From Octopus sinensis (Eukaryota): DNA of 64,000 nt. Numbering within the stretch: the stretch's first letter is position 1; every line of letters starts with the position of its first letter. The position numbers and the translations under genes are program-made. Of the stretch, positions 13,239-50,573 are shown piece after piece. The stretch is taken from contig NC_043004.1 in the NCBI RefSeq assembly GCF_006345805.1, positions 29,326,001-29,390,000 of the forward strand. The letters run 5' to 3'. Below the pieces are notes generated by a model. That model ran no database searches. It was not told the DNA's origin and was given only the letters and a program-made list of their open reading frames with translations.

Positions 13239-13697
13239 GTATATATATATATCAAACATACAGACATGCGATTTTGCATTTGTTGGCTGTCTTCTCGATA
13301 CCAAATATGGTCAGCTTTTGCGCTCCTTTCCTTTTATGGTGTAGTGCCTCAACGACATGCGATGACAAAATCGTACGCCTGTTTGGAGAAAAGTGCAACA
13401 CTCCGTCTCTCTGACACTTGATCGGAAGAGACAGCTGCATTGCCCGATGGAGAACCGTAACTGCCTCCTCTTTATATTACACCTTCAATGTACATTCATG
13501 TGTGTAGAAACTAAGGAAATTGCGATATGTCACTGTCGCTGTGGTATGTGGCATCCCGATTGCCACAACGTGAAGTCTTACAATCTGTTTGTAGTTTCAA
13601 GAAGTTCGAGTCTTGAATCGTTCTGGAAACAAAGAAAAAGATACATTATTTACATAATTTACAATTGACAGATACAATTGACATCTTGTTTGTTGTT

Positions 13698-13743
13698 AGC
13701 AGAAGGTTTCGGCTGATATTCCCTCCAGCCTTCATCAGGTGTC
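13698..13743 (-). ncRNA. Degenerate hammerhead motif (inverted partner)
   Basis: Core CTGATGA, perfect stem II GGCTG/CAGCC and GAAAC are present, but stem III (ACCT) and the 3' strand of stem I are mutated. Confidence 0.5.
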
Positions 13744-20252: not shown

Positions 20253-22952
20253 TCACATCGACAATGCTTTTCTCAATACGTGTGATGTACCAGTTAAGAC
20301 AATCTTTTGCACTTCTTGCAGGGATGGTAAGCCAGGGATCATTCTCATATAATTTTCGGTTCCCTTCTTGATCATTCCTAGTGCTCCTACGATCACTGGT
20401 ATTGTAACCGCCTTGAGATGCCACATTTTCTCAATTTCAATGAGTAGGTCTTTATATTTTCTGAGCTTGTCAAACTCTTTCGCTGAGATATTATGATCAC
20501 AGGGGATGCTCATGTCGATCAATAAGCAAACTTTATTGTTTTGGTCTTTCACAACAATATCTAGTTTATTGGCCTTGATGGTTCGGTCTGTATGTACTGG
20601 AAAGTCCCACAGAATGGTTACATTTTCTCCTTCAGTTACAGCCTCAGGGTGGTGATTATACCACTTGTCGGCAGTTTTGATATTGTAATGCCGACTTATT
20701 AGCCAGTGGAGATATTGGCCAACTCTGTCATGTCTTACTGGTGCTAAGACTTTACATTCAGAGATTAGGTGGTCCACTGTTTCAATCATGTCGTTGCAGA
20801 ATCGGCATTTTGGGTTCGCTCCATTTTTCATCACATTGGCCTGGTAGTTCCGGGTTAATAGGCTTTGATCTTGAGCAACCAGGATGAAACCTTCGCTCTC
20901 TGCTTTTAGCCCTGAGCTCCGTAGCCACTGATGGGTTTGCTTCTGGTCAACATCAGCTTGTTTGCTGCGGGTCACATATTTGCCGTGCAGAGGTTTCTCC
21001 TCCCACCTATCAGCCAATTGCTCGTGCGCTTTTTTCATTGCCATCATTTTCACCTTCTTTGCAACAATAGTTGCCGTACTTCCCTCGGGTTGTTCAGTTT
21101 GGGTATCCTGCACGAGATCAATAGCAAATTTTTTGCTTTCCTTTATGATAGAATGAAGCTTCTTTCGTCTCTCGTGATTTTCCACGAGCTTTAGCATCCA
21201 GTCATTCGATATTTCGAGATATTTGGCCAGTCCAATTGTGGTTGTTTTGTAAGCTAGTTCAAATTGGATCAGGCCTCGACCTCCTTGGGCTCTGGGAAGG
21301 TAAAGGCGATCTACGTCTGCCTTTGGGTGGTGCATCCTATTACAACTCAGCAGCTTGCGTATTTTCCTATCTATATTCTTTACTTCACTCATATTCCAGT
21401 TCAACACATTGTAGCTATATGTAACAACTGGAACTGCTAAGGAATTTATAGCTAACACCTTGTTACGTGCATTTAGTTCAGATTTCAGGACTGCACGAAC
21501 TCTCCTATAACATTCCTTCCTGATCTTCTCTTTCTTGCTTGCATGCTGAATACCAGAGCCTTCATTTATCCCTAAATATTTGTATGTTTGTTCTTGCTCA
21601 AGCTCTCTTATAACTGTGTCAACATCTAACACGACTGAATTTGTGGTCTTCACTTTCCCTTTCTGGAAAGTGGCCTTGGCACACTTCTCAAGTCCAAACT
21701 CCATTCCGATGTCATCGCTGAATGCTTTCACGGTGCGCAATAGGCCTTCAAGTTCATTATTGTCTTTACCATAAAGTTTTAAGTCATCCATATAAAATAG
21801 ATGGCTTATTTTTTTATTGGCAATTTTATACCCATACTCTGTTCTGTTTAATTCACTTGTGAGGGGTATTAGGGCTATGCAGAATATTAAAGGTGAAAGT
21901 GAGTCACCTTGAAAAATTCCACAGTTGATGTTTATATTTTCTGAGGCAAGTACTCCATTAGAGTGGTATAATTGGAGATTCGTATTCCACAACGACATAT
22001 TATGCTTCAGGAAGTTTGAAATCACAGGGGAAATTTTGAAGATGTCCAGCGATCTCAAGATCCATGGATGCGGTATACTGTCGAAGGCCTTTTTATAGTC
22101 AATCCATGCGGTGCTGAGATTTCTGCGCTTGTTGTGACAGTTCTCAAGGATCATACGATTGATTAGCAGTTGATCTTCGCATCCGTAAGAGCCTCGGTGG
22201 CACCCTTTTTGTTCAATGGGGAAAATATTGTTCTTCTCCATGAATGCATATGTTTTCTCCGCCAGGATAGATGTTAGGATTTTATACCTGGTGGATAGAC
22301 AGGTTATAGGCCGATAGTTTTTTGGAAGGTTGGTTTCGTTATTCTTTGGGAGTAGGTAAGTAATGCCACTTGCTAACCATTCAGGTGTTTTCTTTGGGTC
22401 TCTCATAATTCCATTGAGCAGCTGAACTAGCTTACCGTGTGCGCATGGGAGCGATGCGAGCCAGAAATTCGGCACCCTATCTTTACCGGGGGATTTCCAA
22501 TTATGAGCCTTCGTGAGTGCCTTTCTTAGGTCTGCTATTGTGATGTCTTCCCATGCTTGTTGTTGTAAATTTTGGTAGGATCCTTCAGTTTGTATAATCC
22601 AGTCTGCATTTATGTTGTACGTCTTCTTGTCACTCCAAATCCTTTTCCAAAAGTTTTGAACTTCTTCCATGGGAGAGGGGTCTTTAACGGTTACTTTCTC
22701 CTTCCCTATTTCTCTGTAGAATTTTTTGGCATTGGATGTGAACAGCTTATTTTGCTTGTAAAACTTGTTTCTCTTCTCAAATCTTCGTATTCTTTGGGCT
22801 TTTGCTTGGACTTTTTGTTTCAGCGTTTCTTTTATTGATATCAGTTCTTCTCTTGGTGAGGATCCAAATTTTCTCTTCATCTTTCTTCCTGTTCTGGATC
22901 TTACATCATTTCCACATATTATTTCATTTAATATTGATATTTCCCCTCTCAT
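20253..22952 (-). CDS. Reverse transcriptase/RLE endonuclease (C-terminal part of a frameshifted single ORF)
   Basis: 899-aa ORF with WKSPGKD, NYRPITCL, AWIDYKKAFDS, GIFQGDSLSPL, FYMDDLKLY, CRFC..ETVDHLISEC and KLDIVV..IDMS (normally PD). Confidence 0.93.
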   Translation of the reverse strand: MRGEISILNEIICGNDVRSRTGRKMKRKFGSSPREELISIKETLKQKVQAKAQRIRRFEKRNKFYKQNKLFTSNAKKFYREIGKEKVTVKDPSPMEEVQNFWKRIWSDKKTYNINADWIIQTEGSYQNLQQQAWEDITIADLRKALTKAHNWKSPGKDRVPNFWLASLPCAHGKLVQLLNGIMRDPKKTPEWLASGITYLLPKNNETNLPKNYRPITCLSTRYKILTSILAEKTYAFMEKNNIFPIEQKGCHRGSYGCEDQLLINRMILENCHNKRRNLSTAWIDYKKAFDSIPHPWILRSLDIFKISPVISNFLKHNMSLWNTNLQLYHSNGVLASENININCGIFQGDSLSPLIFCIALIPLTSELNRTEYGYKIANKKISHLFYMDDLKLYGKDNNELEGLLRTVKAFSDDIGMEFGLEKCAKATFQKGKVKTTNSVVLDVDTVIRELEQEQTYKYLGINEGSGIQHASKKEKIRKECYRRVRAVLKSELNARNKVLAINSLAVPVVTYSYNVLNWNMSEVKNIDRKIRKLLSCNRMHHPKADVDRLYLPRAQGGRGLIQFELAYKTTTIGLAKYLEISNDWMLKLVENHERRKKLHSIIKESKKFAIDLVQDTQTEQPEGSTATIVAKKVKMMAMKKAHEQLADRWEEKPLHGKYVTRSKQADVDQKQTHQWLRSSGLKAESEGFILVAQDQSLLTRNYQANVMKNGANPKCRFCNDMIETVDHLISECKVLAPVRHDRVGQYLHWLISRHYNIKTADKWYNHHPEAVTEGENVTILWDFPVHTDRTIKANKLDIVVKDQNNKVCLLIDMSIPCDHNISAKEFDKLRKYKDLLIEIEKMWHLKAVTIPVIVGALGMIKKGTENYMRMIPGLPSLQEVQKIVLTGTSHVLRKALSM

Positions 22953-23929
22953 AAATTCAATCTCTTTTTCAATTTTACTTCTCCAGGTTTGATTTCTTCC
23001 CAGGTTTGTTTTCTTTGTTTTTTCGGGGGCATACAGCTGGTTTCAATTGCCCTAGCAGAAGCGTAAATAATTTCATTTAACTCAGTAAAATCAGGTTTTA
23101 ATTCTCGTATTATTTCATTAGTTACATAGTTGCCAATTTGGATTTGTTTTTTATTTTGGTTTGTATTTGAGAGTTTATGAAGTGGTTCTCTATCATTCAT
23201 ACTGGTATGTCTTACAACTTCAAGCGTATTCAGGATTTTCTGCCTCATTTCTGCCATAGACTCTCTGTGTTCTTCAGCAAATGCGAGATCTTCAGTTACT
23301 GTTGTTTTTTCGTTTTCCTGGCTATCTTTAACAGGTACAATAGAATTTCTTGTATCTTCAGGTCTTTGCGTACTTTGGTCAGATGGCAGTCTTTCAATTA
23401 AGCCTCGTGGCGGGATATACTGTTCATCTGATTCTTCATTTCCTTTGTGTCTTATATTTATGTCATTTTCCGTTGCGTGCTTGATCGCGCTTATTTCACT
23501 GTCTGTGAGTCTGTTATTTCTAAGGATATCCCTCCTCACATTTGCTAATTTGTTCTCGTCCAAATAGGGCCTACTGTCTTGATTCCGTGTTCTCCATATA
23601 CTGTAAGAGTTTGCGGTGTGTCTCTCTTGAGATGGCCTACCTAATGCATAGTAATAAGCGTATATTACTTCTTTATACTCTTCTCGGGTCCATTTGTTCC
23701 GCTTACATTTTTCTTTCTGTGGTGGTTGTGGTGGTGAACTTGGAGGGCTCGAGTTGGGGGATTTCCCGTTCAAGTGACCATCCATGTCCGTATTCGGAGA
23801 AGAGTTTGTGCCAGTTGATGACTTTTCGATCCCAGGCTGGCTCTTCCCTGGGGGACGCGCTTCCAGATTAACCATAGGACAAGCGATTTGGTATACTGAT
23901 TTAGTTTTCCTTTTAGTTTCCAAAAACAT
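22949..23929 (-). CDS. N-terminal part of the same R4/Dong polyprotein (not a true ORF1)
   Basis: R4/Dong-like N-terminal motif; joins the RT frame if the 17-nt duplication at 22983-22999 is removed. Confidence 0.8.
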   Translation of the reverse strand: MFLETKRKTKSVYQIACPMVNLEARPPGKSQPGIEKSSTGTNSSPNTDMDGHLNGKSPNSSPPSSPPQPPQKEKCKRNKWTREEYKEVIYAYYYALGRPSQERHTANSYSIWRTRNQDSRPYLDENKLANVRRDILRNNRLTDSEISAIKHATENDINIRHKGNEESDEQYIPPRGLIERLPSDQSTQRPEDTRNSIVPVKDSQENEKTTVTEDLAFAEEHRESMAEMRQKILNTLEVVRHTSMNDREPLHKLSNTNQNKKQIQIGNYVTNEIIRELKPDFTELNEIIYASARAIETSCMPPKKQRKQTWEEIKPGEVKLKKRLNL

Positions 23930-24476: not shown

Positions 24477-25452
24477 AGGTGGGGTCCTATCGGTCAAAAA
24501 AAGTTCAGATGTTTACTACTATTAGGCTTAAGAAAAATTAAGGAAGGGCTGTTCTGTATTGTTTGTGAATAGAGAAGTTGTGTTCGACCAGAGAGAATCT
24601 TAGCATCATCATTTTTTTTTTCCATGTGCGTTTGTGTTATTGCAATAAAAAGTGTTTGTATATTTCGTGTAAGGTAATATTGTGGAGGTTGAAGTTGACT
24701 TTTCTAGAGATGTTTGTATGTCCAGTTAGAAGAACGGGTGTGTTTTTACAATAAAAAGTATATGTTTACATTTATATTTGAATATTCAGGGAGGAAGCAA
24801 AGAAAAGTCAGATTTTCATAGAAAGTTTTAGGGTTTTGTAAGTCCACAAAAAGAAAAGCGTGATGTTTTTAGAGAGAAGAAAAAAAAAAGAAAAAAAAGG
24901 ATGTCTACAGAGGCAATTGTGGGTATCAAAGTTTTTAAAGCTGGTCGAATGTATGATTGAAAACTGTAGATATGTAACTTTGTAAATTTTCTTAACTTAT
25001 TTTGAAGGGCTGTTCTGTATTATTTGTGAATAGAGAAGCTGCGTTCGACCAGAGAGAATCTTAGCATCATTATTTTTTCCATGTGCGTTTGTGTTATTGC
25101 AATAAAAAGTGTTTGTATATTTCGTGCAAGGTAATATTGTGGAGGTTGAAGTTGACCCCTCTAGAGATGTTTGTATGTCCAGTTAGAAGAACAGGTGTGT
25201 TTTTGCAATAAAAAGTATATGTTTACATTTATATTTGAATATTCTGGGAGGAAGCAAAGAAAAGTCAAATTTTCATAGAAAGTTTTAGGGTTTTGCAAGT
25301 CCACAAAAAGAAAAGCGTGATGTTTTTAGAGAGAAGAAAAAAAAGGGTGCTTACAGAGGCAGTTGTGGGTATTAAAGTTTTTAAAGCCGATCGGATGTAT
25401 GTTTGAAAGCTGCAGATATGTAAATTTGTAAATTTCTTAACCCACTTTGAAG
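24449..25452 (-). mobile_element. Poly(A)-tailed retroposed fragment (possibly L1/Tx1 3' end) with a ~461-bp tandem duplication
   Basis: T-run at about 24449-24477; near-identical units at 24543-25003 and 25004-25452. Confidence 0.5.
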
Positions 25453-25725: not shown

Positions 25726-25945
25726 AGACGGCGAGCTGGCAGAATCATTACACGCTGGACGAAATGCTGAGCGGTGTTTTGCCCGTCGCTACGTTATGAG
25801 TTCAAATTCCACCGAGATCGACTTTTCCTTTCATCATTTTGGGGTCAATAAATTAAGTATCAGTGAAACACTGTGAACGATGTAATCAACTCGTCCCCTC
25901 CCCCAAAATGTCAGGCCTTGTGCCTTTAGTAGAAAAGATTATTAT
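25726..25945 (+). mobile_element. SINE family B, (ATT)n-tailed subtype
   Basis: Colinear with the copy at 8912; preceded and followed by (TAT)/(TGT) repeats. Confidence 0.85.
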
Positions 25946-27816
25946 TGTTGTTGTTGTTGTTGTTGTTTCAATTTTATGTGCAAGTATGAGTGTATACACA
26001 AATACACCACGTTAATAATGGGACCCTTGAGCAGGGGACAAGGAAGCTCCAGCGTTGTATCATTACAGTGATTTGCTTTTGTTCCTCTTTGTTTAGAATT
26101 CGAAGTTTGCCTCATTGGCTTAGCTTTTCATTCTTAGAGGGCAGATAAAATAAGTGCCAGACATACATTGGGTTTGATTCAGTTGACTATATATCCACTA
26201 TAGAATATTTTTTGTTTCTCACTCTGACGTAAGAACTGTGTTTGTGTATGTGTGCGGGCGCGCGTGCTCATAAAATACTCCTACTACATTCCAAGTAGAT
26301 CTAACCCAACTCATATTATTCATTCTTCAACTTCCCACGCAGCTTTGCACCAATTTAAGATTTTTGTTTGAGTATGCAATATACATAGCTATTTTGGATT
26401 ATCTCTAAGAAAGTTCAACGACAATGTACATCACATTGAATCACAATAAAATCCACTTAATCTCCTTCTCCAGATTGCAAATTCCATTACAGCCTAGTTA
26501 GTCTTATCTAGTTAATACGTTACATATTGCAACTGTTTTCCGTTCAGATTAAAAAATAGAATCTACTGTCAGTAAAATGTTTCTATTCATTGAAGTTAGT
26601 CACAAGATAAATATTAAGGTATAATGTTCATTGCCATACATGCTTCTTCTTGTGTCCAAATAATTTCCGATCATCTTGTTATTATTATCATCGATTCAAG
26701 GAAGGAAAAGAGAGAAAAGGAACAAACAAAGAGGAGGAGTACAGTACCTGTTGCACTGCAATTCCATAACTATAACCCGGGCTAGTCTTTCATTTATATT
26801 GCTTTCTTTGTTTCGGTTTAAAATTTCAAATTGATAAAACTAAAACATTTCAAACGAAATCTAATATTCAAAGGTAAAAATGAAATAAGTTTCAGGACTT
26901 TAGGTATTTTCATTTTTTTCTTCTTTTTTCCTTTTCGAAATTTCATTTTTAAGTTATTAAAATTGTGAGTACTGAAGTAAATAAACTATAGAATATTACA
27001 TCCTTTACAAAAAAAAATCTGAAATATAGCGTGATATCCACCATGAGATCTCGATAAGTAGTCTTCACAACACATCACATCATCAGATTTAATGAAGTAA
27101 CCTTTACAACACAATGATGTCACATAAGGTCTTCACACATACTTTTCACAACATCGCTATAAACAACAATTATAAGTACAAATTCTGTCAAATAACCAAA
27201 ATATATCGAAATTTTTATACTTTTGTTGTATTTTATATTGAAGATATGTTACATAATACATAAGTTTTGCCGTTATCCCCTCTATCTGAAAAAGGGAAAG
27301 CAACAAAAATAAACACTGTCTGAAGACTAATCGCTCTAGGATAAAGAAGTGGAAAGGATTAAATTGCTTTGAAGAATAATCAAATATGTTTCTTTGCGCT
27401 ACAAGATGGAAAATTATTAATCGATTATTTCGGAGGATGGAGGGATCCTATAAGTGAAAAAATCAGCATGAAAATAAATTTACTTTACATTTTTGTTGTA
27501 TTTGCTTCCAGATTATAGTTATGAAAGATTCCATCACGAAATATCTTTGGATATATGAAATGGTAGCCTTTGATATAACTGTTCAAGTCAGTCTTAATGT
27601 ATTCATCTCTTATTCTTAATAGAAACTACTTTTAGATCAAGTCACTTGATCTCCAATACAAATTTGAAATATCTCTTCCATAAAACGGATCAGACGAGAA
27701 TTAAGCTGGAGTGGATATATACATACAGGCGCGCGCGCGTGCGTGTTGTATACATATATATATATATATTTAAATATGTGGAGTGATGAATAATGTTTTC
27801 TTTTGTTTAATTTCAG

Positions 27817-27881
27817 ATTACGCAATTTAAGGTGGCAGAGATGGAATGTGAGCTTTCATGCCTTTCCCAGTGGCCCCAAAG
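27817..27881 (+). other. Candidate 65-nt orphan exon
   Basis: Polypyrimidine tract ending TTTCAG| and a donor AAG|GTGAGA; two frames are open. Confidence 0.3.
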
Positions 27882-28658
27882 GTGAGAGTGAAATACAGTC
27901 ACCCCAAATGAAGATTAAAATCACGACGGTTACCTTTTACTTTATAATGTTCCCTGTGGGTGGTGGATAATGTAGTCAATATGAAAAATAACTGCTAATG
28001 TAAATATAAGTATAAACGCAAAGGAGGAGAATTATAGAATGAACTACCTTCAGAACATGTCGGATTCATTGATATCAGAGTAACGAAAGGCAATGTCAAC
28101 CCCGGGCAGATTTCTATCATTATTTATTCCTCAGTAATATTTCAGTATGTGATTAGAGTTCAATGTTCAATATTTCGACTGGAGACTGATAACGTTGCAC
28201 AGTGTATAAAAGTTAAATTATAATTAATAAAATATTTCATGCACCACCAGTGAACATGCTACGACAGCATCTAAGCTCTCAACCAGTTGAATCTATAAAT
28301 TTGATCTCGATTCCTCGGTGTAGATATTTTACTGCACTTAGGCTACTGAAGCAATTCGGAAAGACATGAATGTCCCAATTTTCCATTTCTATTACCCATT
28401 CTAAAATTGAAATACTGCACCTATGAAAAAAACGTTATAACTAGATATAAAGATATAAATTATGTTGTCAGTATTCACTTACCGTCTTGACAACATGATT
28501 AAGACACGATAATCGATAAAGATAACGTGACGACAGAGGTACTTTATTAAGAAAATAACCATCTGAAACTATTTTTAGTGGCTTGAAACAAAATATTGTT
28601 TTCTTGAAATAAAAATCACTGGATTCAATCATTTCTCAATAATTCTATTTCCTTCACA

Positions 28659-28884
28659 GAGGAAGTTTAGACTAATGGCTCAAGCGCGAGAGACAATCAG
28701 AATTTAGATTAAGAATTCAACTCTTGAGGACTATCAGTTTAGATTGACAATTCAAGCAGGGAGGATTAGAAGAGTTTATATTAACAGTTCAAGCCCAGAA
28801 GGCAATCAGAATTTAAATAAATGGTTTAAGCCCGGAAGATTATCAGAGTTTAGACTAACAGCTCATGTTCAGAAGACTATCAGG
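28659..28884. repeat. Degenerate ~37-bp minisatellite, about 6 copies
   Basis: Recurring agagtttagactaacagttcaagcccagaagactatc-like unit. Confidence 0.75.
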
Positions 28885-28949
28885 GATAGTCAAAATGTTA
28901 GAATTCAGGAAACAATATGAAAATAGAATTTAATTTAAATCTTCCGAAT

Positions 28950-30046
28950 GAAAATAACCTTGTTTTATCTTTGATTATATTTCCCTATGAGGCGTTATGG
29001 TAAGGTCCTTTGTGAAGCATTATCGTAAAATCCACCTCGTGTATTTGTCATTGCAGTTTACGATAATCAATACAAAGTATTTCGCTATAGAGCTTATTGT
29101 CATTTTCACCAGTTCTTTAGCAATAGGATTTGTGAAGCTAACTATAAATTTAATAACATTTTGTCATTCCAATTTAGGTAGCACAAATCCCTTGAAATAG
29201 TTGTTGAGCAACCTACGATCAGTCTGACTGAGTAGACGTCTGCTGATAGTAGATAGTCAGTCGATCAATAAACGTTGCCGGATGTCTAACACTTCATATG
29301 TATCATGCCATCACCTAGATGAGGACTATATTGCATATACTTAATGTGCAATGATTTATTACATGAGGCGATGAATCTTCACTAAGACATGTTGCATTTT
29401 GTACACTGTACAGTCTATTTTTGTATAACTCTTATGTACTGTTTGTAAATAGAGCAGATATGATATGAATTGTTATTCTCGTCGGCGAGAAATAGTTCAT
29501 GATCCTCTGTATTTAACTCTGGTTTTGTGCAATCCTGACTGAATTTGAATTTAGTACTGTTGATGATACTGCTATTTTTGGTTTGTGGTTTGTGTTTTGT
29601 TATGTTAATACAGTTAAGTAGGGAAGAACAAGCTCTTGAGATGATGGTGGAACAGTATTCTGGAGTTACTTTGTTTCGAGTTATTTTGTTTCTAAATGAC
29701 TAATATTTCATCTTTTATTTCCTTTAGTTTTCTATTAAAGTCGGTAAGGATTAATCAGATTGTTTTGTATGTTCTTTGAGCTCTCTTTGTTCCGTCATTT
29801 TAACTTCATAGATATTGACATCGGCGACAACTATGATTGTCACACGCTGACGAGAGGTCAATACCTCGAAACTCGAGTCCGTGTGTATCATAAGTTGAAG
29901 ACGGGAAGGATGACTTCCCTTTGCAAATACTGACAGGACACAGATAGTGTGTCTATGGCCAGCTGGAGGAGTGTGTCCTCCTGGGGCTAAAAACTACAGT
30001 AGCATCCACCCTTAGGGGTTAGCCATATTGAAATGGCAAAAATACG

Positions 30047-30050
<4 letters not shown>
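28950..30050 (-). mobile_element. Putative decayed 5' part of an RTE-clade LINE (5' UTR plus APE endonuclease remnant)
   Basis: Minus-strand remnants VQNATCLSEDS and SIAKYFVLIIVNCN resemble APE motifs. The 5' UTR start is shared with 51812-51920. Confidence 0.4.
29828..29897 (+). ncRNA. Canonical type I hammerhead ribozyme
   Basis: Stem I CACACG/CGTGTG plus extension TATGAT/ATCATA and CAAC/GTTG, core CTGACGA at 29847-29853, stem II GAGG-TCAATA-CCTC, GAAA, palindromic stem III ACTCGAGT, GUC cleavage triplet (cut at 29879/29880). Confidence 0.88.
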
Positions 30051-30125
<75 letters not shown>

Positions 30126-30127
30126 TA

Positions 30128-30290
30128 CACTTCACCAATTGACAACTGGTATTGGTTTATGTCCCCATAACTAAGCGGCACGACAAAAGAACCGATACAA
30201 TAAGTACCAGTAAAAAAAAAAGTCAGTACTGGGGTCTGGGGTTGATTTGTTCGACTAAACCCTTCGAGGAGGTGCTCCAGCATGGCTACA
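30128..30290 (+). mobile_element. SINE family A, 3' fragment
   Basis: ttgacaactgg..taagtaccag..ttgatttgttcgactaaac..gtgctccagcatggc. Confidence 0.75.
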
Positions 30291-30508
30291 TGTTCTCTGT
30301 ATAAAAACAGAATTTTCGAACTCCAGTCAGAAGCAAAGCAGTTGCGACATGGCCCTACGTCTTTCTATCTTAATTAACTTTTTAAAATAAGATAAATCTG
30401 TGAAAACGGGTAGCCTTTAAAACTAAACCATCTAAAAGACTTCTAGTGCATTTTCAGCTTTTTTTTCTATATTTCTACTTATTTGGAATATAATAACTTT
30501 GTTTTGTG

Positions 30509-30553
<45 letters not shown>

Positions 30554-30568
30554 TGTGTGTGTGTGTGT

Positions 30569-30605
<37 letters not shown>

Positions 30606-30613
30606 GTGTGTGC

Positions 30614-30681
<68 letters not shown>

Positions 30682-31802
30682 GCGAATGTTATCGCTAATT
30701 GGCTATTTCCATTACTTTGAGGCATTGAAATTAGTACTATTGGACGATAGTTGGTAGGGTCAGAGGAGTTCCTTTTATTGTTTATGGGATACACTAACAT
30801 GTTTTCAAAACTAAGAATATATACCAAAGAGAGAGAGAGAGATAGAGGGAGAGGGAGAGAGAGTTAAAGAGAAAGGGGGAGAGAGAAGCATGTGATGTAT
30901 TTGTTAAGTACAGGATATGCAATATTAGAGAACAAGTGTTTGTTAACTGGTTGTTGTTATATATTTATTATAAACACAACGCAATGTTTATGACGGAATT
31001 CGAACTGGTTGCCGTCTACTGCTGACACCTACAACTCTGTGATATGTCATTTTATCAGAGCATAATATTCACTCCCATTCATTTTCCATTTACTTTCTAT
31101 CTTTTATTTTTTCTTACTTTTCGCTTTTGTTTTGCTTTTGTTTGTTTTTTGTTTGTTTGTTTGTTTTTTGTTTTTGTGGGGTGGGAGTATTTTGTTTTCT
31201 TTTGTTTTCTTTTGGCTTTTTACTAGTTACAATCGTTTAGAGGGAAGAAATAGGCCAGTTGTTTACAATATTAGATTACAAGTTTTAATGCCTAAATATA
31301 AATTTAAGTGACCTCAAACTGAAATGTAACAGAGAAATTGATAGTAGTAATAGCAGTAACAGCATTAAAAGCAGTAGTGTTTCTTCAGAGACGTAGTAAT
31401 AGTAGTAATAGTAGTAAGAGCATTAAAAGCAGTAGTGTTTCTTCCATCAGAGACGGAGGTGTCATACTATTTACATCTGTTTTCTCTCTGGTAAGACCTA
31501 ATATTTTTAAATCTTTCATTTCGATTTCTCCTTATTTTTTCCTTCCTATTGTCTTGTTATCTTTATACTCCGTGTTTTATAAATGCAGAACACCGAAAAT
31601 CAGTGGAGTGGTGGAGATGTACTACTTTATTACATTGTTTTATGTTCTGACTTCAAATACCGACCAGATCCATTTTAACTTTTTCCTTACTGGGTTTTAT
31701 TCTTACTACTTCTCTTTTTTAAACATCATTTAAGTACTGGGTTTCATTATATTAACTATACAGTTCCCCCAAAATGTGTGTCCTTGTGCCGATGTTACGA
31801 AA

Positions 31803-31884
<82 letters not shown>

Positions 31885-31885
<1 letters not shown>

Positions 31886-32040
31886 GGCAGTGACCTAGAA
31901 GAGTTGTTAGCACACCGGGCGAAATGCTTAGCGGCATTTCGCCCGTCCTTACGTTTCTGAATTCAAATGCCGGTTGACTTTGCCTTTTATCCTTTTGGAG
32001 TTGAATTAAGTGCCAGTTAGGAACTGGGGTCGATGCAATA
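31885..32040 (+). mobile_element. SINE family B, partial
   Basis: gttagcacaccgggcgaaatgcttagcggcatttcg..gactttgcctttt..ctggggtcgatg. Confidence 0.75.
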
Positions 32041-32149
32041 GGAGAAAGTTTTATGTTGGCTTTCGTAGAGGGTTATAGGTGAGCAAAAAAGGAAAACACT
32101 GGATTTTCATGAAAATCAACAGACTGGTTTATTCTGGAGAACTTTCGCG

Positions 32150-33325
32150 TATTATCATTATTTATCTTGTTGAAACGCAGCAACTTCCCTGCAGAATGTC
32201 CACAATTGGTAGACTACGGTAACGCTTTTCATTCCGATTTTGATAACTCTGCGGAAGAATGGAACAGTTCCAAGCAACACTGTTTTCTGTAGATGTTTTG
32301 CATTCACATTTACTCCTATCTTTTTATTCCGATATTTGAGCTTGTTACTTATAATACCCATGGCTACAATAACAATAGAGATCACACCTACCTTTAATGG
32401 CTACAGTCTTTTTTCCCTCTTCAAGTCATCATATCTCACCTGTTTCTTTTCATTTTCTTTTTTGTCACTGTCATCACCAGGGCATACTTCTATGATTAAA
32501 CAGATGTTTTTCCTCTTAATTAATTACCTCAATATCATTACATCTTGCAGTATCTTTATTTTCTCATTCGTGCCCATTCCACGTCTTTACTCTCTCTAAT
32601 CCATACTTATCACACAACTCCTTGTAACTCATTCTTGCAACTTTATTGTATTTTCTTTTGTATTACTTTGTGCTAGCTTCGTATACACATTTACAATATG
32701 CCAAACAGTTTCACCTTCATCAACTCACAATCTGCATTTGTTACTTTCAATTGTATTATCAATCCTGCATTTGGCGTAATTTGCCCTTAAGTGTTTGTTC
32801 TTGCGCACCTTCCATCGGCGTCTCATTTCAGCTCACCCCTCTCGTAATCTACCCGTACATATTTTTCATTCCATTTTCTTTCATTTTCATTATTCCTTTT
32901 TTCTCTTTGTTTTTGTATTATTTTGTCCCCCAAACAAGAGTCAGCCCTGTCTATGGCAAATATAAACAACTTCCACAGCTGATTAGCCCTCGCCCACCTT
33001 TGTGTCTGATTCGATACAGCCTGTCAATGTAGCTCTTCAGGAATAATGTGCCGTGCATTGTGAGTAGTTTTCTAAATTTTCTGTCTAACGACTGTAATTC
33101 TGCTTTCCTCCAAATGTTAATACATTTCAATATATAATTCAATAATTCAATTTGCCCATGTATTGATTACTTGAAACTTATTTCTTCCATTCAGTTTTAA
33201 CTGCTGCACCAGTCAAAGTCTTTGGAGAAACTTTTTGATTCGTTTCTTTTCCATCACTGCATCACCTCCAATATGCTCAGATATTTATACTCAGCATCAG
33301 CCATCCTTTTCATTATTTCTTCTAA
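32150..33325 (-). mobile_element. Strongly decayed R4/Dong-clade fragment
   Basis: LDRKFRKLLTMHG..YIDRLY..KGGRGLI and LQKTVLLGT remnants match the 20-23 kb element. Confidence 0.8.
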
Positions 33326-33330
33326 TGAAA

Positions 33331-33558
33331 GTGACGAACAGGCAGAATCGCTTGCACACCAGGCTAAATGCTTGGCAGAATTTCGTCTGCCTTTATGTTC
33401 TGGGTTCAAATTCCAATGAGGTCAATGAGGTCAACTTTGTCTTTCTTCCTTTCGAAATCGATTAAATAAGTACCAGTTGAATACTGAGGTTGATGTAATC
33501 GATTTACACCCATCTCCTTAAAATTTCAAGCCTTGAACCTATGGCAGAAATGATTATT
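33331..33558 (+). mobile_element. SINE family B, degenerate
   Basis: Colinear with the other family B copies. Confidence 0.75.
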
Positions 33559-34159
33559 TCCTCTGATGGTAGTATACGTCACGAATATTACTCCACATTT
33601 TTTAAAATCAAATTCCATTTCGATGTCCTTGCTAAAACAATGATTAACTAAAGAACTAACTTCGGCTCCGTCCTTATTATACAGCTTTGAAATTATCCAT
33701 AAATAATAAATGGTTGATATTTCGCTGTTTTCCTTTAAGCTTATATCCAGATGTTACTTTTCTCAGTATCAATGATAAAGGAATTATTCATAAAACAAAA
33801 AGTAAAGTAGATAAACTATCTCCTTGAAAAATCTCTCTCTTCATTCTTAATGTTTCTAGGTTTTATCCACATGATGTGAGCTCAGATTTTCAACTATTAT
33901 ACTTTTTTTTCTTTCTTTTTTTTTGTTTGAAGTATCCTTAAAACAGTCCTGTTCACTCAATAGTTGTCCACTCAGGAATCTCCCAATTTTCGTTGACCAG
34001 TGTATTAAGCTCATCTGTTATTCTTTTACGATAACCTGTCAGCTTCACTGCTCAATACTTTTGAACACCATCAGATCCAGCTGCTTTCTAGTTACTCATC
34101 ATCCTATTTGTCTCATATTTTCTTTTTCTGTTGTGAACAAGAAACAGACTCCTTTAAAT

Positions 34160-36577: not shown

Positions 36578-36795
36578 AAGGCGACGAGCTGGCAGAATCG
36601 TTAGCACGCCGGGCAAAATGTTTAGGACATTTCGTCTATCTTTACGTCCTGAGTTCGAATTCCACCGAGGTCAACTTTCCCTTTCAACCTTTCGGGGTCA
36701 ATGAAATAAGTACCAGTTACGCACTAGAGTCTGTATAAGAGACTAGCCCCTCCTCGCAAATTTCAGGCCTTGTTCCTTTAATAGAAAGGATTGTC
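36578..36795 (+). mobile_element. SINE family B, (ATT)n-tailed subtype
   Basis: Full head, core and caggccttg..agaaaggatt tail. Confidence 0.85.
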
Positions 36796-37397
36796 ATTGT
36801 CGTTATTATCAACATTATATTTTTCAACTGTTTTATACGTATCTACCAGATACTGATATATGCACATTATTATCATTTGGGAATATACAACTGACTGTTT
36901 ATTACTAGAGCAGTTTCGCTTTGACCTGGTTAGTAGTTTATTGTATCTGGTGTCTATGAGTTTATTGTACCTGGTGTTTTATTTCGTGAATAGAATATGC
37001 TCAGTGCAAGTCGCATTATTTTGTTAGACGATGGTGTGGTTCGTATGTCTTACGTGACAGGTGTTAATTATTTTAGTGTTTACGGACAAGTGGAGTATGT
37101 GATGCAAGGGTTGTCTTACATTGAATTTCTAGTATCAGTTTTTTATTGGGTGTTTTGTCGTGTTCTTTTATTTGGTTGTTGTCGACTATACAAAAGGGGT
37201 GGCGGACATAGGGTACGGCGCATATCTACTTCTCAATGTCTGGGTTTTGTATGTGCAGAATTTCTAATAGAGACATTTGTTACTGACACACCTTATCTAT
37301 ACACAGATATTTAACTAAATATTCATTAAAATGATATAACGTAGATTAATTTATAGTTACTGCACTATTTTCCTCTTCTTTATTTTACAAACGTGGA

Positions 37398-44949: not shown

Positions 44950-47189
44950 ATTAGAACTTGAGTCAGTTCTGACGATGATAATCCTTGTTGCTTGATCACT
45001 GAATTATCTACTAATGGAATCATAGTGTGCGCGGTTGAGTATTCCACTGTTTCATGTGTATCGTGGAGAACCGGCATGATGCAATCTACGACAAAACTTG
45101 CTAACACATTCCAGATGGGTTTCTATACAGCTGCTGTCTGTTTTTATGTAGTATATCTGGGTTCATTTGTCAGATGAAGTCTAAATATGCATCAAATCAA
45201 ACCTACTAAAACGCTTCAGCTTACCAATGCAAGTGAATTAATCACTTGCCATTTGTACCGCATGTTTTCATCAGTAAACTGTACCTCTTTGTAGAGCGTA
45301 TTCACAGCTCAGTACCTATTTACTTTGAAATGTCCTATATCAAAGAGGTTGGGCATCTCAAAGCTCAATGAGATAGGCCGCCTATATTAAAAGTTCTCTT
45401 ATAGACTTTGACTTCTGTACAAATGTTAAAATGTTAAAAATATGTCCGATAACATCTAATCGTATTACTGTTCCTTAAAGCTGACTTAATGGGTTATACA
45501 ACTGTTCTTTAAAAGTAACTTAACGGAATATAATATATGATTGTTTCTTACAGATGAGTTAATACATTGTACTGTGTAAATATTCTTTACGGGTGCCCTA
45601 ATCGACTGAACTGTTCCAGTTTCTTATAAATGTATAAATACTAACATTGTTCATACAAAGGACAATAAAGACGACTAAACAGTATATTTAGTATCGATAT
45701 TCACTTTACTAGAAAATAAGGAATCTGATCCTTATAGTACAGGTAGCATCTTAGATGCAACAGTTAGCAAAACATTACAGAAAACTTGACACATCAAACA
45801 TTTATTCATTATTCATGCAAATGTTCATTATACATTTAACAATTCAGATAACTACTCATTATGCAAAAGTTAACTATTAGGGCAGTTGTCCATATACTAC
45901 TGCTAACTCAAACAGTTTTTCATTATACAGCTGTTATCAACTCAGACTGATGTTTATTATACTACTATATATAGTATATATGTGTGTGTGTCTATACATG
46001 CACAAACATATACACGTACATACACTTAAACAACACACGTATTTTCACGATATATTTATATATTGGTATTGGTATTGGCATCCTTTCTGTCTCGGGAGAC
46101 AATGGAGTTGCGCATGAAGTAGTCTAGTCCGGCTTTTATATTTCATGTCCTGATACATTTCCTGCTGTGGCTGTGTAGTCCTATCCCGGACAAACACTCC
46201 CTCTGGCAGGTACCGCAAATGTAGCGAAGACTGTTCCTGGCTGGTTGTAGTGCCATAGTCTCTTGTTTACGTCTCTTCCTTTCTTTCCATTTCTCCTCTC
46301 TCTCTCTCTCTCTGTCACTCCTTTGTATTCCCTCTTTTACGGTACGTCGCCATTCTCCACGGTTGCCGGCAACTGCCTCCCAACCGCTAATATATATTTA
46401 TAGAAAATATAGAAAATATTAAAAAACACAATAATTAAAACAAAATATAATTGAAATAAATACGTGAAAGTTTTTCTACTTAAGTTAATTTGGTTGCTCC
46501 ACGATCCCGTTCCCTGAATCTTAACTGTGCAACCGAAACCGCAATTGAGAATTTTTTGAGATATTTGGTATTGTAAAATACAATCTTTTTGAGGATATTT
46601 CTTTTTAAACTCGATATAATATTTTAATTTTACTAGTAATCTATCTTTTACGTGTAATCTATGATCGGAACCTATTTGGTTTTGTGTCATCCTAACCTTT
46701 TGCGAGAGTCTCTGACGCCAGAGAAGGGTAATTTTATCTGGTGACTGTTTGATTTCCGAACAACGGTGAATTATAGTTTGTCTTCGTTTTCACATTTTCT
46801 TCGTCATGTTCTCGGGGAGAAATCTAAAAGAAATTGATCCTCACCAATTTTCATAGTTTTATGTCAAGTCATAATTTCAGTGATTTATTTCTTTTCTTTG
46901 CTCCTTTCATATTTTCACCGAAGGTTTGAGAATTTTCATCTGTAAACTTTACCTTATTGCATGATGAAAGTGCTGTAAGTACAGGCAGGTGCTGTTGGGG
47001 CTTGAGGTATTTGCTTATCTATTTGTCGTATGCTTTGGAAATATAAACAAACAACATCAATTGTGTGGGAGTTTTTTTCAAATTAAGTCAGTGAAATATC
47101 ACATTTGAATGCTATGAAAGATGTAGTTATAGTTGATTGATTAAGTGGTTAGTTAATTGGTCGGTTGGGTGTTTCGTTAAACAGTTGGT

Positions 47190-47770
47190 TAGTTGGTTAC
47201 TTGCTAACTTGGGTAATTGGTTGCTTGGTTGACTGGTTGGTTGGCTGGTTGACTGGCTGGTTGGTTGGTTGGTTGGTTGGTTGGCTGGTTGGTTGGTTGG
47301 TTGGTTGGTTGGTTGGTTGGTTGGTTGGTTGGTTGACTGGCTGACTGGTTGATTGGTTGGTTGATTGGTTGACTGGCTGGTTGATTGGTTGGTTGGTTGG
47401 TTGGTTGGTTGGTTGGTTGGCTGGTTGGTTGGCTGGCTGATTGGTTGATTGGTTGGTTGATCGGTTGACTGGTTGGTTGGTTGGTTGGTTGGTTGGTTTG
47501 TCGGCTGGCTGATTGGTTGATTGGTTGGCTGGTTGGTTGACTGACTGGCTGGTTGATTGGTTGGTTGATTGGTTGACTGGCTGGTTGGTTGGTTGGTTGG
47601 TTGGTTGGTTGGTTGGTTGGTTGGTTGGTTGGTTGGTTGGTTGGTTGGTTGACTGGCTGGTTGGTTGGTTGGTTGGTTGGTTGGTTGGTTGGTTGGTTGG
47701 CTGGTTGGCTGGTTGGTTGGCTGGTTGGTTGGTTGGTTGGTTGGTTGGTTGGTTGGTTGGTTGGTTGGTC
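47190..47770. repeat. Long (GGTT)n tract with GACT/GGCT/GATT variants
   Basis: Read directly; generates the spurious (NQPT)n and (LVGW)n ORFs. Confidence 0.95.
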
Positions 47771-48379
47771 AGAAGGTCGGTCGGTCGATTAAACCACAAT
47801 GATGTAAGATTTAGAAATATATTTCCTAACTCTACACTGTAAAATTGACAATAAAAGTATGGCAGTTGGAATATTGATTCTCAAAATGTCAGATTGGCTG
47901 CAGATTTTACGGAGACATCGCAACAACAACATTAATTTATGCAATATCTGATAATATAGTAACTAACAAAACCAATAATGGAAGCAATATAAATCGCCAG
48001 CGATAGAAAATTTAGAATAATTAAAACCGTAGTCGACTGCGGTAGCAGCGGCGTCGACTGCTGGGACAGCGTGGTTAGTGGTGAGGACGACAAAGATATA
48101 GCGCAAGCAAAAGAAAAAATCATATTCAAAATAATGATGACGGTAATAATTATATTGAAATGGATGATGATGAGGGGGAGGAAGAGGAGGAGGACACGTT
48201 TGATGATGATGACGGTTCAGAAGATGATTGATATTCAAGTTCGTCATCGTCATCATCATCATCACCATCTTCATCAACATTGTCGTCGTCATCATCATCA
48301 TCATCATCATAAAAAGAACTGGTGTCAAAATATTACTTGAATTACACATACTGACATCCTAAATGAAAATGCTATTGTT

Positions 48380-48428
<49 letters not shown>

Positions 48429-48821
48429 GTATACAATAAATATGTGTGTCCGTGTTTAATTATACTATGCAATATGTATAGACGTATTAATGGATATACG
48501 AGTAAATGTTTATAAAAGCAATGACAGATCATAAAAGGGTTACCAGTTGTACGCTCCTAGTATCCTTTTAGATAGCTCGATCAGGTGGGAATATACAGGA
48601 TAACAGACAGAAAATTTCGGAGTAAATTCAAATTTGAGGAAAAGCAGAGATAATTACAACAAATTCTTTTTGGATGGGTTTCATTTTGTTCATGACTGAA
48701 CTGGCTGAAGGGTGAGAAAAGTTGCTTCACAATCATGTGCTTATGTGTTCAATCCATCAACGCGGCACCTCCTACTGATGTATTCCGCAATAAACGTTCG
48801 TGTAATTCGGTAAATAAAAGC

Positions 48822-48866
<45 letters not shown>

Positions 48867-49904: not shown

Positions 49905-49947
<43 letters not shown>

Positions 49948-49949
<2 letters not shown>

Positions 49950-50497: not shown

Positions 50498-50533
<36 letters not shown>

Positions 50534-50573
50534 CAACAACAACAACAACAACAACAGCAGCAGCAGCAGCAGC

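What the first reader, a model, noticed from the sequence alone, without database searches (positions are those of the whole stretch)
29828..29897. Intact type I hammerhead ribozyme with tertiary-contact architecture
Seen in the sequence: CAAC-TATGAT-TGT-CACACG | CTGACGA | GAGG-TCAATA-CCTC | GAA | ACTCGAGT | C^ | CGTGTG-T-ATCATA-A-GTTG. Every core nucleotide is canonical and the cleavage triplet is GUC. Stem I is 6 bp, then an asymmetric UGU/U internal loop, then 6+4 bp more. Established knowledge: natural fast hammerheads use a contact between a stem I bulge and loop II (Schistosoma Sm-alpha has loop II CAAAUA; here it is UCAAUA). Short palindromic stem III is typical of metazoan/PLE hammerheads that can act as dimers. 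Inference: this copy is probably catalytically competent, whereas the surrounding element is riddled with stops.
Basis: partly seen in the sequence, partly recalled or inferred. Interest (0 to 1): 0.9.

Follow-up and report, generated by a model that had tools for sequence, protein, structure and literature searches.

The report
Lone hammerhead ribozyme in octopus DNA
The sequence is a complete, textbook animal-type (type I) hammerhead self-cutting RNA motif, sitting as one isolated copy in repeat-rich intergenic DNA of Octopus sinensis. It is most likely a stray copy of a small ribozyme-carrying retroelement, so it is a real but ordinary member of a well-known class.

Summary
The motif is at 29828-29897 (+) exactly as described. 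All core nucleotides are canonical and the cleavage triplet is GUC, with the cut between 29879 and 29880. Helix I is 6 bp, then a UGU/U internal loop, then 6+4 more bp. Helix II is 4 bp with loop UCAAUA. Helix III is 2 bp with the palindromic tetraloop UCGA.

Rfam Hammerhead_1 scores it 32.2 bits, just under the gathering cut-off of 34 (E=4.6e-6 in a 701-nt scan). My own descriptor finds only this site in the window and none as good in 500 shuffles.

The window is Octopus sinensis CM016866.1:29,326,001-29,390,000. The ribozyme lies about 28 kb upstream of the RDH7 gene, among LINE and SINE debris.

There is no Pfam domain in six frames of 27.8-30.05 kb, no second hammerhead, no tandem unit and no paralogue in the window or in about 140 kb of other octopus DNA.

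The ribozyme heads a roughly 235-nt stretch that is richer in G+C and strongly structured, and that ends at a (TA)n microsatellite. The best reading is a solitary monomer or 3'-terminal fragment of a retrozyme-type or Penelope-dependent element. Catalysis, the tertiary contact and covariation remain untested. It is a new member of a known kind and of low interest.

The parts
29828..29840 (+). Helix I, distal 5' strand (CAAC, UAUGAU), followed by the 5' side of the internal loop (UGU, 29838-29840), the candidate 'loop 1'
   Evidence: Sequence. Distal pairs have probabilities of 0.85-1.0, except the innermost at 0.49. The duplex with 29886-29897 is -7.4 kcal/mol.
29841..29846 (+). Helix I, proximal 5' strand (CACACG, positions 2.6-2.1)
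   Evidence: Rfam alignment and descriptor hit.
29847..29853 (+). Catalytic core C3 U4 G5 A6 C7 G8 A9 (CUGACGA)
29854..29867 (+). Helix II (GAGG/CCUC, with G10.1-C11.1) and loop II UCAAUA. A fifth U-A pair closing a CAAU tetraloop is possible.
   Evidence: (AAUA of the loop matches the consensus).
29868..29870 (+). Core G12 A13 A14
29871..29878 (+). Helix III, ACUCGAGU: A15.1-U16.1 and C-G closed by the palindromic tetraloop UCGA. The 8-nt palindrome can form an intermolecular 8-bp helix in a dimer.
   Evidence: The cofold minimum-energy structure uses it as an 8-bp intermolecular helix.
29879..29880 (+). C17 (29879) and C1.1 (29880). The predicted self-cleavage site lies between them (GUC^C).
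   Evidence: Follows from hammerhead numbering applied. Not tested experimentally.
29880..29897 (+). Helix I 3' strand: CGUGUG (1.1-1.6), U (3' side of the internal loop), AUCAUA, a bulged A, then GUUG
29898..30049 (+). Structured downstream domain richer in G+C (47% against 32-33% upstream). Hairpins at 29903-29919, 29936-29954, 29965-29981 (nested in 29956-29989), 30008-30019 and 30022-30037. Taken to be the rest of the ribozyme-bearing unit.
   Evidence: Composition. Fold of 29880-30049 is -58.5 kcal/mol, z=-3.0, and 0 of 200 shuffles fold as well. Helices listed.
30050..30125 (.). (TA)n microsatellite abutting the 3' end of the unit. Candidate insertion target.
   Evidence: In 13.3-42.6 kb the only (TA)n runs of six or more units are here and at 27755-27769.

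Best explanation
This is a solitary genomic copy of a short, non-coding, hammerhead-bearing retroelement of the animal 'retrozyme' / Penelope-dependent kind. The copy is about 235 nt (roughly 29815-30049): a canonical type I hammerhead followed by about 150 nt of hairpins. It was inserted next to a (TA)n microsatellite in intergenic, repeat-rich DNA of Octopus sinensis.

Inferred mechanism, from the family literature: elements of this kind are transcribed as multimers or read-through RNAs. The hammerhead folds, helix I docks on loop II, and the 2'-OH of C17 attacks its 3' phosphate. That cuts GUC^C and gives unit-length RNAs with 2',3'-cyclic phosphate and 5'-OH ends. These RNAs can be circularised by a host ligase, copied by a Penelope-like reverse transcriptase, and inserted.

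This copy carries both sides of the scissile bond. Its template was therefore an uncleaved, multimeric or religated (circular) RNA.

As a lone monomer it has no partner ribozyme in cis. If transcribed at all, it would have to cleave as a monomer on its 2-bp helix III, or as an intermolecular dimer through the ACUCGAGU palindrome. It probably has no function for the host.

Shown: the motif, its integrity, its isolation, the structured G+C-richer unit and the (TA)n junction. Inferred: the retroelement origin, the unit boundaries, and any catalysis.
For: - Motif: intact, canonical, and far beyond chance.
- Architecture: matches the published definition of canonical metazoan type I hammerheads (6-bp helix I, 4-bp helix II, 1-2-bp helix III with a small palindromic loop; PMC4209133). 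A '2 bp plus tetraloop' helix III is described as typical of invertebrate retrozyme hammerheads (PMC7229834).
- Unit size: the G+C step from 0.32 to 0.47 at about 29815 and the strongly structured 152 nt downstream (z=-3.0) delimit about 235 nt. Reported retrozyme units are 170-400 nt, and coral units are 220-240 bp.
- Junction: the unit ends at (TA)n. Penelope-like elements carry their hammerhead near the 3' end of the insertion unit and prefer microsatellite targets (PMC8557442; PMC11167929).
- Solitary copies are normal: monomeric, dispersed copies are reported for retrozyme families, which are related to Penelope pLTRs (bioRxiv 10.64898/2026.07.22.740005). An independent animal family with the same ACUCGAGU helix III occurs as one copy per contig in 16 metagenome contigs.
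- Cephalopod precedent: cephalopod genomes hold Penelope elements, and 235 Rfam Hammerhead_1 loci were reported in the giant squid (PMC6962438).
- No coding capacity around the ribozyme.
Against: - No second copy of the unit or of its flanks was found in the window, in about 140 kb of other Octopus DNA, or as ORF-level relatives in two protein collections. Repeat-family membership is therefore inferred, not shown.
- The defining tandem arrangement of retrozymes is absent.
- Unit boundaries rest only on composition and folding. No target-site duplication was found, and a candidate junction repeat was not significant (p about 0.14).
- The unit's G+C (47%) is slightly above the '<45%' quoted for animal retrozymes.
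- (TA)n runs are common in this window, at about 13 loci per 64 kb. Adjacency is only modestly unlikely by chance (about 3%, my estimate from that count).
Confidence: 0.5

Rival explanations
1. It is the 3'-terminal piece (pseudo-LTR fragment) of a severely 5'-truncated autonomous Penelope-like element, not a dedicated non-autonomous element. Target-primed reverse transcription started about 170 nt downstream of the hammerhead cut site and stopped just upstream of helix I.
For: The hammerhead lies 152-170 nt from the (TA)n junction. In the Anolis Poseidon element the cut site lies about 85-90 nt upstream of the internal reverse-transcription start that defines the insertion end (PMC11167929). 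Penelope elements favour microsatellite targets. Penelope elements exist in cephalopods. Retrozymes and pLTRs are phylogenetically intertwined.
Against: There is no RT or GIY-YIG remnant in six frames of 27801-30050, and none visible on the + strand of 25900-27800 or 30126-33600 (by eye). Metazoan Penelope hammerheads are usually 'minimal': no helix III, helix II of 7-8 bp, helix I of 4-5 bp, and no loop contacts (PMC4209133; PMC6155905). This one is canonical. No inverted or tandem partial copy typical of Penelope insertions was found.
Confidence: 0.25
2. It is a domesticated, host-functional hammerhead, for example one that processes a long non-coding RNA or a distant gene's transcript, like the amniote intronic HH9/HH10 ribozymes. 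In that case selection keeps it intact.
For: Every core position and all three helices are intact even though the copy is solitary and sits in otherwise decaying repeat DNA. Non-coding DNA differs by about 4% between O. sinensis and O. vulgaris and by 8-14% between O. sinensis and O. bimaculoides, so an old neutral copy would be expected to have taken hits.
Against: No host exon was seen within about 28 kb. The nearest recognised gene, RDH7, starts at 58.2 kb. There is no evidence of transcription or of orthologous conservation, because the orthologous sites could not be reached with the tools. Intactness is equally explained by a recent insertion.
Confidence: 0.07
3. It belongs to an Sm-alpha-like, RNA polymerase III-driven SINE that carries a hammerhead.
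For: Sm-alpha of Schistosoma is the classic dispersed, non-autonomous carrier of a canonical type I hammerhead. tRNA-derived SINEs are abundant in this window.
Against: No tRNA-like structure was found in the window. No B-box match (GGTTCGANNCC, up to 1 mismatch) lies within 4.8 kb of the ribozyme. The SINE fragment at 30130-30290 lies beyond the (TA)n and belongs to a different repeat.
Confidence: 0.05
4. It is a chance match with no evolutionary relationship to hammerheads.
For: The Rfam score is below the gathering threshold. A relaxed descriptor does throw up AT-rich look-alikes in other Octopus DNA (L020 3611-3667) that Rfam does not support.
Against: E=4.6e-6 covers all 4227 families in 1.4 kb searched. 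By my arithmetic that is about 1e-9 for this one family, or on the order of 1e-3 to 1e-2 chance hits in a genome of a few Gb. None of 500 shuffles gave a hit as good. There is also a 10-bp helix I extension and a consensus-like loop II.
Confidence: 0.02

Closest known systems
Canonical metazoan type I hammerhead ribozymes (Rfam RF00163; Schistosoma Sm-alpha, newt satellite 2, animal non-LTR retrozymes)
   Same: Identical core and GUC cleavage triplet. Helix I of 6 bp followed by an internal loop and a distal extension. Helix II of 4 bp with a 6-nt loop ending AAUA. Helix III of 2 bp with a palindromic tetraloop, able to extend in a dimer.
   Different: It scores 1.8 bits under the Rfam gathering cut-off. 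Loop II is UCAAUA rather than CAAAUA. The helix I internal loop is small and asymmetric (UGU/U). It is a single copy, not a tandem array.
Animal non-LTR retrozymes (Cervera & de la Pena 2020, PMC7229834)
   Same: Non-coding, highly structured unit of about 235 nt headed by a canonical type I hammerhead, in an invertebrate genome. Monomeric derivatives of such families are reported.
   Different: There is no tandem repeat, no second hammerhead within at least 29 kb on either side, and no evidence of circular RNA. G+C is 47% against the '<45%' quoted.
Penelope-like element pseudo-LTR hammerheads (Cervera & de la Pena 2014; Craig et al. 2021; Frangieh et al. 2024)
   Same: The hammerhead lies a short distance upstream of the 3' end of the insertion unit. 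The unit abuts a microsatellite target. The helix III region is palindromic.
   Different: No RT/GIY-YIG open reading frame was found nearby. The ribozyme is canonical, not the 'minimal' variant usual in metazoan Penelope elements.
Dispersed hammerhead family in metagenome contigs Ga0126336/Ga0099820 (L001-L016)
   Same: Type I, 6-bp proximal helix I, 4-5-bp helix II with a 4-6-nt loop, the same ACUCGAGU helix III and GUC triplet, and one copy per contig.
   Different: Helices I and II, loop II and the flanks are unrelated in sequence. Similarity among its copies extends several hundred nt on both sides. The host animal is unknown.
Amniote intronic hammerheads HH9/HH10
   Same: Single-copy genomic type I hammerheads of the Schistosoma-like kind.
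   Different: Those are intronic and ultraconserved. Here no host gene and no conservation have been shown, and the best Rfam match within the hammerhead clan is Hammerhead_1.

Membership tests
Hammerhead ribozyme, type I (canonical metazoan form; Rfam RF00163) | Conserved core C3 U4 G5 A6 N7 G8 A9 ... G12 A13 A14, A15.1-U16.1, H17 (not G) | tested here: met
   CUGACGA at 29847-29853, GAA at 29868-29870, A29871-U29878, C29879.
Hammerhead ribozyme, type I (canonical metazoan form; Rfam RF00163) | Three helices around the core, with helix I open-ended (type I topology) and a G10.1-C11.1 pair | tested here: met
   Helix I is 6 bp plus a 10-bp extension, helix II is 4-5 bp starting G-C, and helix III is 2 bp plus a tetraloop.
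Hammerhead ribozyme, type I (canonical metazoan form; Rfam RF00163) | Helix I about 6 bp, helix II about 4 bp, helix III 1-2 bp capped by a 2-4-nt palindromic loop (PMC4209133) | tested here: met
   The values here are 6 bp, 4 bp, and 2 bp plus UCGA.
Hammerhead ribozyme, type I (canonical metazoan form; Rfam RF00163) | Score at or above Rfam's curated gathering threshold | tested here: not met
   32.2 bits against 34. It is a near miss with full-length alignment to the model.
Hammerhead ribozyme, type I (canonical metazoan form; Rfam RF00163) | Loop I / loop II nucleotides that make the tertiary contact | tested here: inconclusive
   An internal loop (UGU/U) sits 6 bp from the core, and a 6-nt loop II shares AAUA with the consensus. 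No homologues and no 3D method were available to test the contact.
Hammerhead ribozyme, type I (canonical metazoan form; Rfam RF00163) | Covariation in the helices among homologues | not testable with these tools
   No homologue was found in the window, in about 140 kb of Octopus loci, in the metagenome, viral or prokaryote collections, or in the protein collections. Eukaryotic genomes cannot be searched by DNA here.
Hammerhead ribozyme, type I (canonical metazoan form; Rfam RF00163) | Site-specific self-cleavage | not testable with these tools
   Only energy models were run. The monomer hammerhead fold is -16.3 kcal/mol against -23.1 for the minimum-energy alternative. The dimer minimum-energy structure is the hammerhead fold.
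Animal non-LTR retrozyme | Tandem repeats (two or more units), each unit with a hammerhead | tested here: not met
   There is one hammerhead in 64 kb and no direct repeat of the unit.
Animal non-LTR retrozyme | Non-coding unit of about 170-400 nt with compact secondary structure | tested here: inconclusive
   A unit of about 235 nt is suggested by the G+C step and by the fold z-score of -3.0. The boundaries are not confirmed by paralogues.
Animal non-LTR retrozyme | Expression as linear and circular RNAs | not testable with these tools
   No transcriptome access. No ORF-level trace was found in collections that include transcriptome assemblies, which is only weak negative evidence.
Penelope-like element (pLTR hammerhead) | Adjacent ORF encoding a telomerase-like RT and a GIY-YIG endonuclease | tested here: not met
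   No Pfam hit in six frames of 27801-30050. Nothing RT- or EN-like is seen on the + strand in 25900-27800 or 30126-33600 (by eye).
Penelope-like element (pLTR hammerhead) | Hammerhead near the 3' end of the insertion unit, and insertion into a microsatellite | tested here: met
   The cut site is 170 nt from a (TA)n tract. The significance is modest, because (TA)n tracts are frequent here.
Penelope-like element (pLTR hammerhead) | 'Minimal' hammerhead architecture usual in metazoan Penelope elements (no helix III, long helix II, short helix I) | tested here: not met
   The motif is canonical.
Sm-alpha-like SINE | Internal RNA polymerase III promoter (tRNA-like head with A and B boxes) | tested here: not met
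   ARAGORN found none. The nearest B-box-like match is at 34787.

The most novel reading that the evidence does not exclude
The copy may represent a still-active cephalopod retrozyme family with canonical, fast type I hammerheads that standard Rfam annotation misses because they score just under threshold, and that produces abundant small circular RNAs in octopus tissues. Alternatively, this particular locus may be a conserved, host-used self-cleaving RNA. Nothing found here excludes either reading. The motif is flawless, the unit is compactly folded, and no orthologue or transcriptome could be examined.
Probability: 0.12. Interest if true: 0.5.

Novelty: new member of a known kind. Interest (0 to 1): 0.22.

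Why it matters
Type I hammerheads in animal genomes are well documented, in their thousands, as parts of retrozymes, Sm-alpha-like elements and Penelope-like elements. 235 Rfam hammerhead loci have already been reported for a squid genome. One more intact copy in an octopus therefore changes little.

Its modest value is practical:
- It is a clean, sub-threshold example showing that default Rfam annotation, and filtered E-value scans of long sequences, can miss perfect hammerheads.
- It gives a seed (hammerhead plus a 150-nt structured tail next to (TA)n) for defining a possible octopus retrozyme or Penelope-dependent family and testing whether cephalopods make ribozyme-derived circular RNAs.

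Tried and rejected
- **Second hammerhead or tandem unit.** The pattern search found one other core match, at 13680-13738 (-), which has no helices and fails the descriptor. There is no direct or inverted repeat of the unit.
- **Partial second unit at the right end.** I tested whether 29812-29825 repeats at 30025-30037. The local alignment score was reached by 14-15% of controls, so I rejected it.
- **Coding remnant around the ribozyme.** Pfam on six frames of 27801-30050 gave nothing relevant. Listing the open segments shows only opposite-strand LINE pieces.
- **Relatives by DNA pattern.** A pattern allowing any helix II gave 0 hits in viral contigs and 16 metagenome contigs of an unrelated family. 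A helix II/loop II-specific pattern gave 0 hits in prokaryote genome contigs and in viral contigs.
- **Relatives through accidental ORFs over the element.** A composite six-frame peptide gave no hit at E<=10. The 80-aa antisense frame searched against 1.84 billion representatives gave no hit.
- **More Octopus DNA.** Five loci (about 140 kb beyond the window) from O. sinensis, O. bimaculoides and O. vulgaris contain no copy of the unit. They contain only an AT-rich descriptor look-alike that Rfam does not support.
- **Orthologous site.** It could not be reached. The nearest usable anchor gene is 28 kb away and flanks are limited to 10 kb. The LINE ORF in the window is not on record, and its relatives are at most 65% identical.
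- **Pol III SINE head.** There is no tRNA-like structure and no B box nearby.
- **(TA)n on both sides of a 2.27-kb stretch (27755 and 30051) as a sign of a larger insertion.** This is suggestive but unsupported: nothing in between looks like an element, and I dropped it as evidence.
Full report
**Observation.** Mapped to standard hammerhead numbering:
- Core strand C3-A9 is CUGACGA (29847-29853).
- Helix II is GAGG/CCUC with the conserved G10.1-C11.1 pair and loop UCAAUA (29854-29867).
- G12 A13 A14 is 29868-29870.
- Helix III is ACUCGAGU (29871-29878): A15.1-U16.1 plus C-G, closed by the palindromic tetraloop UCGA.
- C17 is 29879, and the predicted cut falls between 29879 and 29880.
- Helix I is CACACG/CGUGUG. 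It is followed by an asymmetric UGU/U internal loop, then six more pairs, a bulged A and four more pairs.

**Is it more than chance?** Rfam's default scan of the window reports nothing. A permissive scan of 29500-30200 aligns the entire Hammerhead_1 model (positions 1-45) to 29841-29885 at 32.2 bits. The gathering score is 34. The E-value is 4.6e-6 for that search over all 4227 families. The whole-window permissive scan did not list it at all, which is a filter effect.

I wrote a descriptor requiring the exact core, A15.1-U16.1, H17 and three helices. It finds only this site in 64 kb on both strands. Of 500 dinucleotide-preserving shuffles, three gave a hit with helix I of 5 bp or more. None gave a hit with helix I of 6 bp or more and helix II of 4 bp or more.

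The 10-bp distal extension of helix I lies outside the Rfam model and adds further support. A duplex this stable occurs in about 3% of same-spaced flank pairs in this microsatellite-rich window.

**Folding.** Nearest-neighbour folding of the 70-mer keeps the whole of helix I. Distal pair probabilities are 0.85-1.0, except the innermost distal pair at 0.49. The model prefers an inactive pairing of the core (-23.1 kcal/mol) to the hammerhead secondary structure (-16.3 kcal/mol). Such models ignore the core's non-canonical pairs and the loop contact, so this is not evidence against activity. It does show that helix III is marginal.

Two copies co-folded give a minimum-energy structure of -50.9 kcal/mol, against -46.2 for two monomers. 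That structure is exactly two hammerheads joined by an 8-bp intermolecular ACUCGAGU helix III.
- The literature says short palindromic helix III motifs work best as dimers (PMC4209133; PMC6155905).
- It also says that invertebrate retrozyme hammerheads with 2 bp plus a tetraloop cleave efficiently as single motifs (PMC7229834).

**Where it sits.** The locus returned for Octopus sinensis retinol dehydrogenase 7 is NCBI GCA_006345805.1, CM016866.1:29,374,183-29,401,602. It matches window 48183-64000 at 100% over 15,818 nt. The window is therefore CM016866.1:29,326,001-29,390,000, and the ribozyme is at 29,355,828-29,355,897.

The RDH7 coding exons begin at about 58.2 kb. No other host exon is apparent, so the ribozyme is about 28 kb upstream of the nearest recognised gene. 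The surroundings contain:
- microsatellites;
- tRNA-derived SINE copies;
- LINE fragments on the opposite strand (30435-30863, 32954-33753);
- a nearly intact LINE at 20253-23929.

**The 'surrounding element'.** I could not find one. Six-frame translation of 27801-30050 gives no Pfam domain at E<=10, apart from one irrelevant weak match. The + strand of 25900-27800 and 30126-33600 shows only short, low-complexity open stretches. The 2.25 kb around the ribozyme has no other copy in the window. There is no second hammerhead and no tandem or inverted copy.

What the sequence does show is a step in G+C from 0.32 (29400-29814) to 0.47 (29815-30049). It also shows a downstream 152 nt that fold into a series of perfect hairpins. 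For 29880-30049 the fold is -58.5 kcal/mol with z=-3.0, and none of 200 shuffles folds as well. This stretch ends directly at a 76-nt (TA)n tract. I take about 29815-30049 (about 235 nt) as the ribozyme-bearing unit. These boundaries are inferred.

**Search for relatives.** Eukaryotic genomes cannot be searched by DNA with the tools available, so I tried indirect routes.
- A pattern fixing the core and helix III but leaving helix II free found nothing in viral contigs. It found 16 metagenome contigs.
- Those 16 carry one dispersed family, GAGCAA-CUGAUGAG-GUUC-ACUGAA-GAAC-CGAAAC-UCGA-GUC-UUGCUU. It has the same type and the same helix III, but it is otherwise unrelated to the octopus sequence. 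It shows that solitary, non-tandem copies of canonical type I hammerheads are normal in at least one other animal genome.
- A helix II/loop II-specific pattern found nothing in prokaryote genome contigs or viral contigs.
- Peptides read through the element in all six frames found nothing in the 5.8-billion-cluster collection. The 80-aa antisense frame found nothing among 1.84 billion representatives.
- Five further Octopus loci, about 140 kb from three species, contain no copy.

**Comparison with what is known.** Cervera & de la Pena (2014) define the canonical metazoan type I hammerhead as helix I of 6 bp and helix II of 4 bp interacting through loop nucleotides, with helix III of 1-2 bp capped by a 2-4-nt palindromic loop. 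This motif fits on every count. Such canonical motifs are carried by three kinds of element:
- tandem 'non-LTR retrozymes' of 170-400 nt that are expressed as circular RNAs;
- Sm-alpha-like elements;
- as monomeric derivatives, families now argued to descend from Penelope pseudo-LTRs.

Penelope-like elements place their hammerhead near the 3' end of the insertion unit and favour microsatellite targets. Their metazoan ribozymes, however, are usually 'minimal'. Cephalopod genomes contain Penelope elements, and 235 Rfam Hammerhead_1 loci were reported for the giant squid.

**Verdict on mechanism.**
- Most likely (about 0.5): a solitary monomer of a retrozyme-type, Penelope-dependent non-autonomous element. 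Both sides of the scissile bond are present, so its template RNA was uncleaved, multimeric or circular. As a lone copy it lacks a cis partner. If transcribed, it would depend on monomeric activity or an intermolecular dimer.
- Close rival (about 0.25): the extreme 3' end of a 5'-truncated autonomous Penelope element.
- Domesticated host ribozyme: about 0.07.
- Pol III SINE: about 0.05.
- Chance: about 0.02.

Retrozyme membership fails the tandem test. Penelope membership fails the ORF test and the minimal-motif test. Hammerhead type I membership passes every sequence and structure test, except that the score is 1.8 bits under Rfam's threshold.

**Novelty and interest.** This is a new member of a known kind. 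It is a clean example, and a useful seed for a cephalopod family search, but a specialist would not be surprised. Interest is 0.22.

**What would settle it.** A genome-wide copy census with a covariation test, inspection of the orthologous sites in O. vulgaris and O. bimaculoides, RNA end-mapping at 29879/29880, and an in vitro cleavage assay of monomer against dimer with core and loop mutants.

Noticed in passing
window 20253-23929 (-): Nearly intact non-LTR retrotransposon. ORFs of 326 aa and 899 aa overlap by 4 nt (one frame change). Relatives are single proteins of about 1200 aa with PF00078, and the best identity in the protein collection is only 65%. The exact ORF is not on record. By eye the C-terminus has a Cys/His motif and a D..D..K-like stretch suggesting a restriction-like endonuclease type.
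   Followed up: partly
window 58180-59600 (+), continuing past the window end: Exons of retinol dehydrogenase 7 (SDR family) of Octopus sinensis. This anchored the window to CM016866.1:29,326,001-29,390,000. The O. bimaculoides orthologous locus (L018) is 86-93% identical in alignable non-coding DNA.
   Followed up: yes
L020 3611-3667 (+) and L021 6831-6887 (+): A second hammerhead-descriptor match upstream of an RDH7-like gene in O. sinensis, and its O. vulgaris orthologue: UUCUA CUGAAGA GGAA-17nt-UUCC GAA AUUGAUUCAAU A UAGAA. It is AT-rich, and no Rfam hammerhead hit appears at E<=10. The two species differ only in loop II and just beyond helix I, but they are about 96% identical there, so this is uninformative. 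Probably chance.
   Followed up: partly
L001-L016 (metagenome contigs Ga0126336_*, Ga0099820_1041535): A dispersed family of canonical type I hammerheads with the same ACUCGAGU helix III, one per contig. Similarity among copies extends several hundred nt on both sides, and there is no adjacent Penelope-like ORF. Presumably host-animal DNA in a host-associated metagenome. The host was not identified.
   Followed up: partly
window 28664-28883: Six copies of a 37-nt tandem repeat (65-70% identity between the 74-nt repeat blocks), about 1 kb upstream of the ribozyme. No link to it was found.
   Followed up: no
window 25777-25955, 31639-31821, 33392-33570, 36630-36807: Copies of a tRNA-derived SINE (B-box-like GAGTTCGAATTCC, ...AATAAGTACCAGT...) ending in tri-nucleotide microsatellites. 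A fragment of another SINE lies at 30130-30290, just beyond the (TA)n.
   Followed up: no
window 24543-24989 and 25004-25435: A direct duplication of about 460 nt, 88-96% identical.
   Followed up: no
window 47130-47880 (-): A long 12-nt minisatellite that reads as PTNQ repeats in all three frames of the - strand. It creates spurious ORFs of 190-230 aa.
   Followed up: no
window 29841-29885 (method note): The Rfam 'evalue' scan of the whole 64-kb window did not list the hammerhead that scores 32.2 bits when only 701 nt are scanned. Sub-threshold ribozymes can be lost to the speed filters in long inputs.
   Followed up: yes
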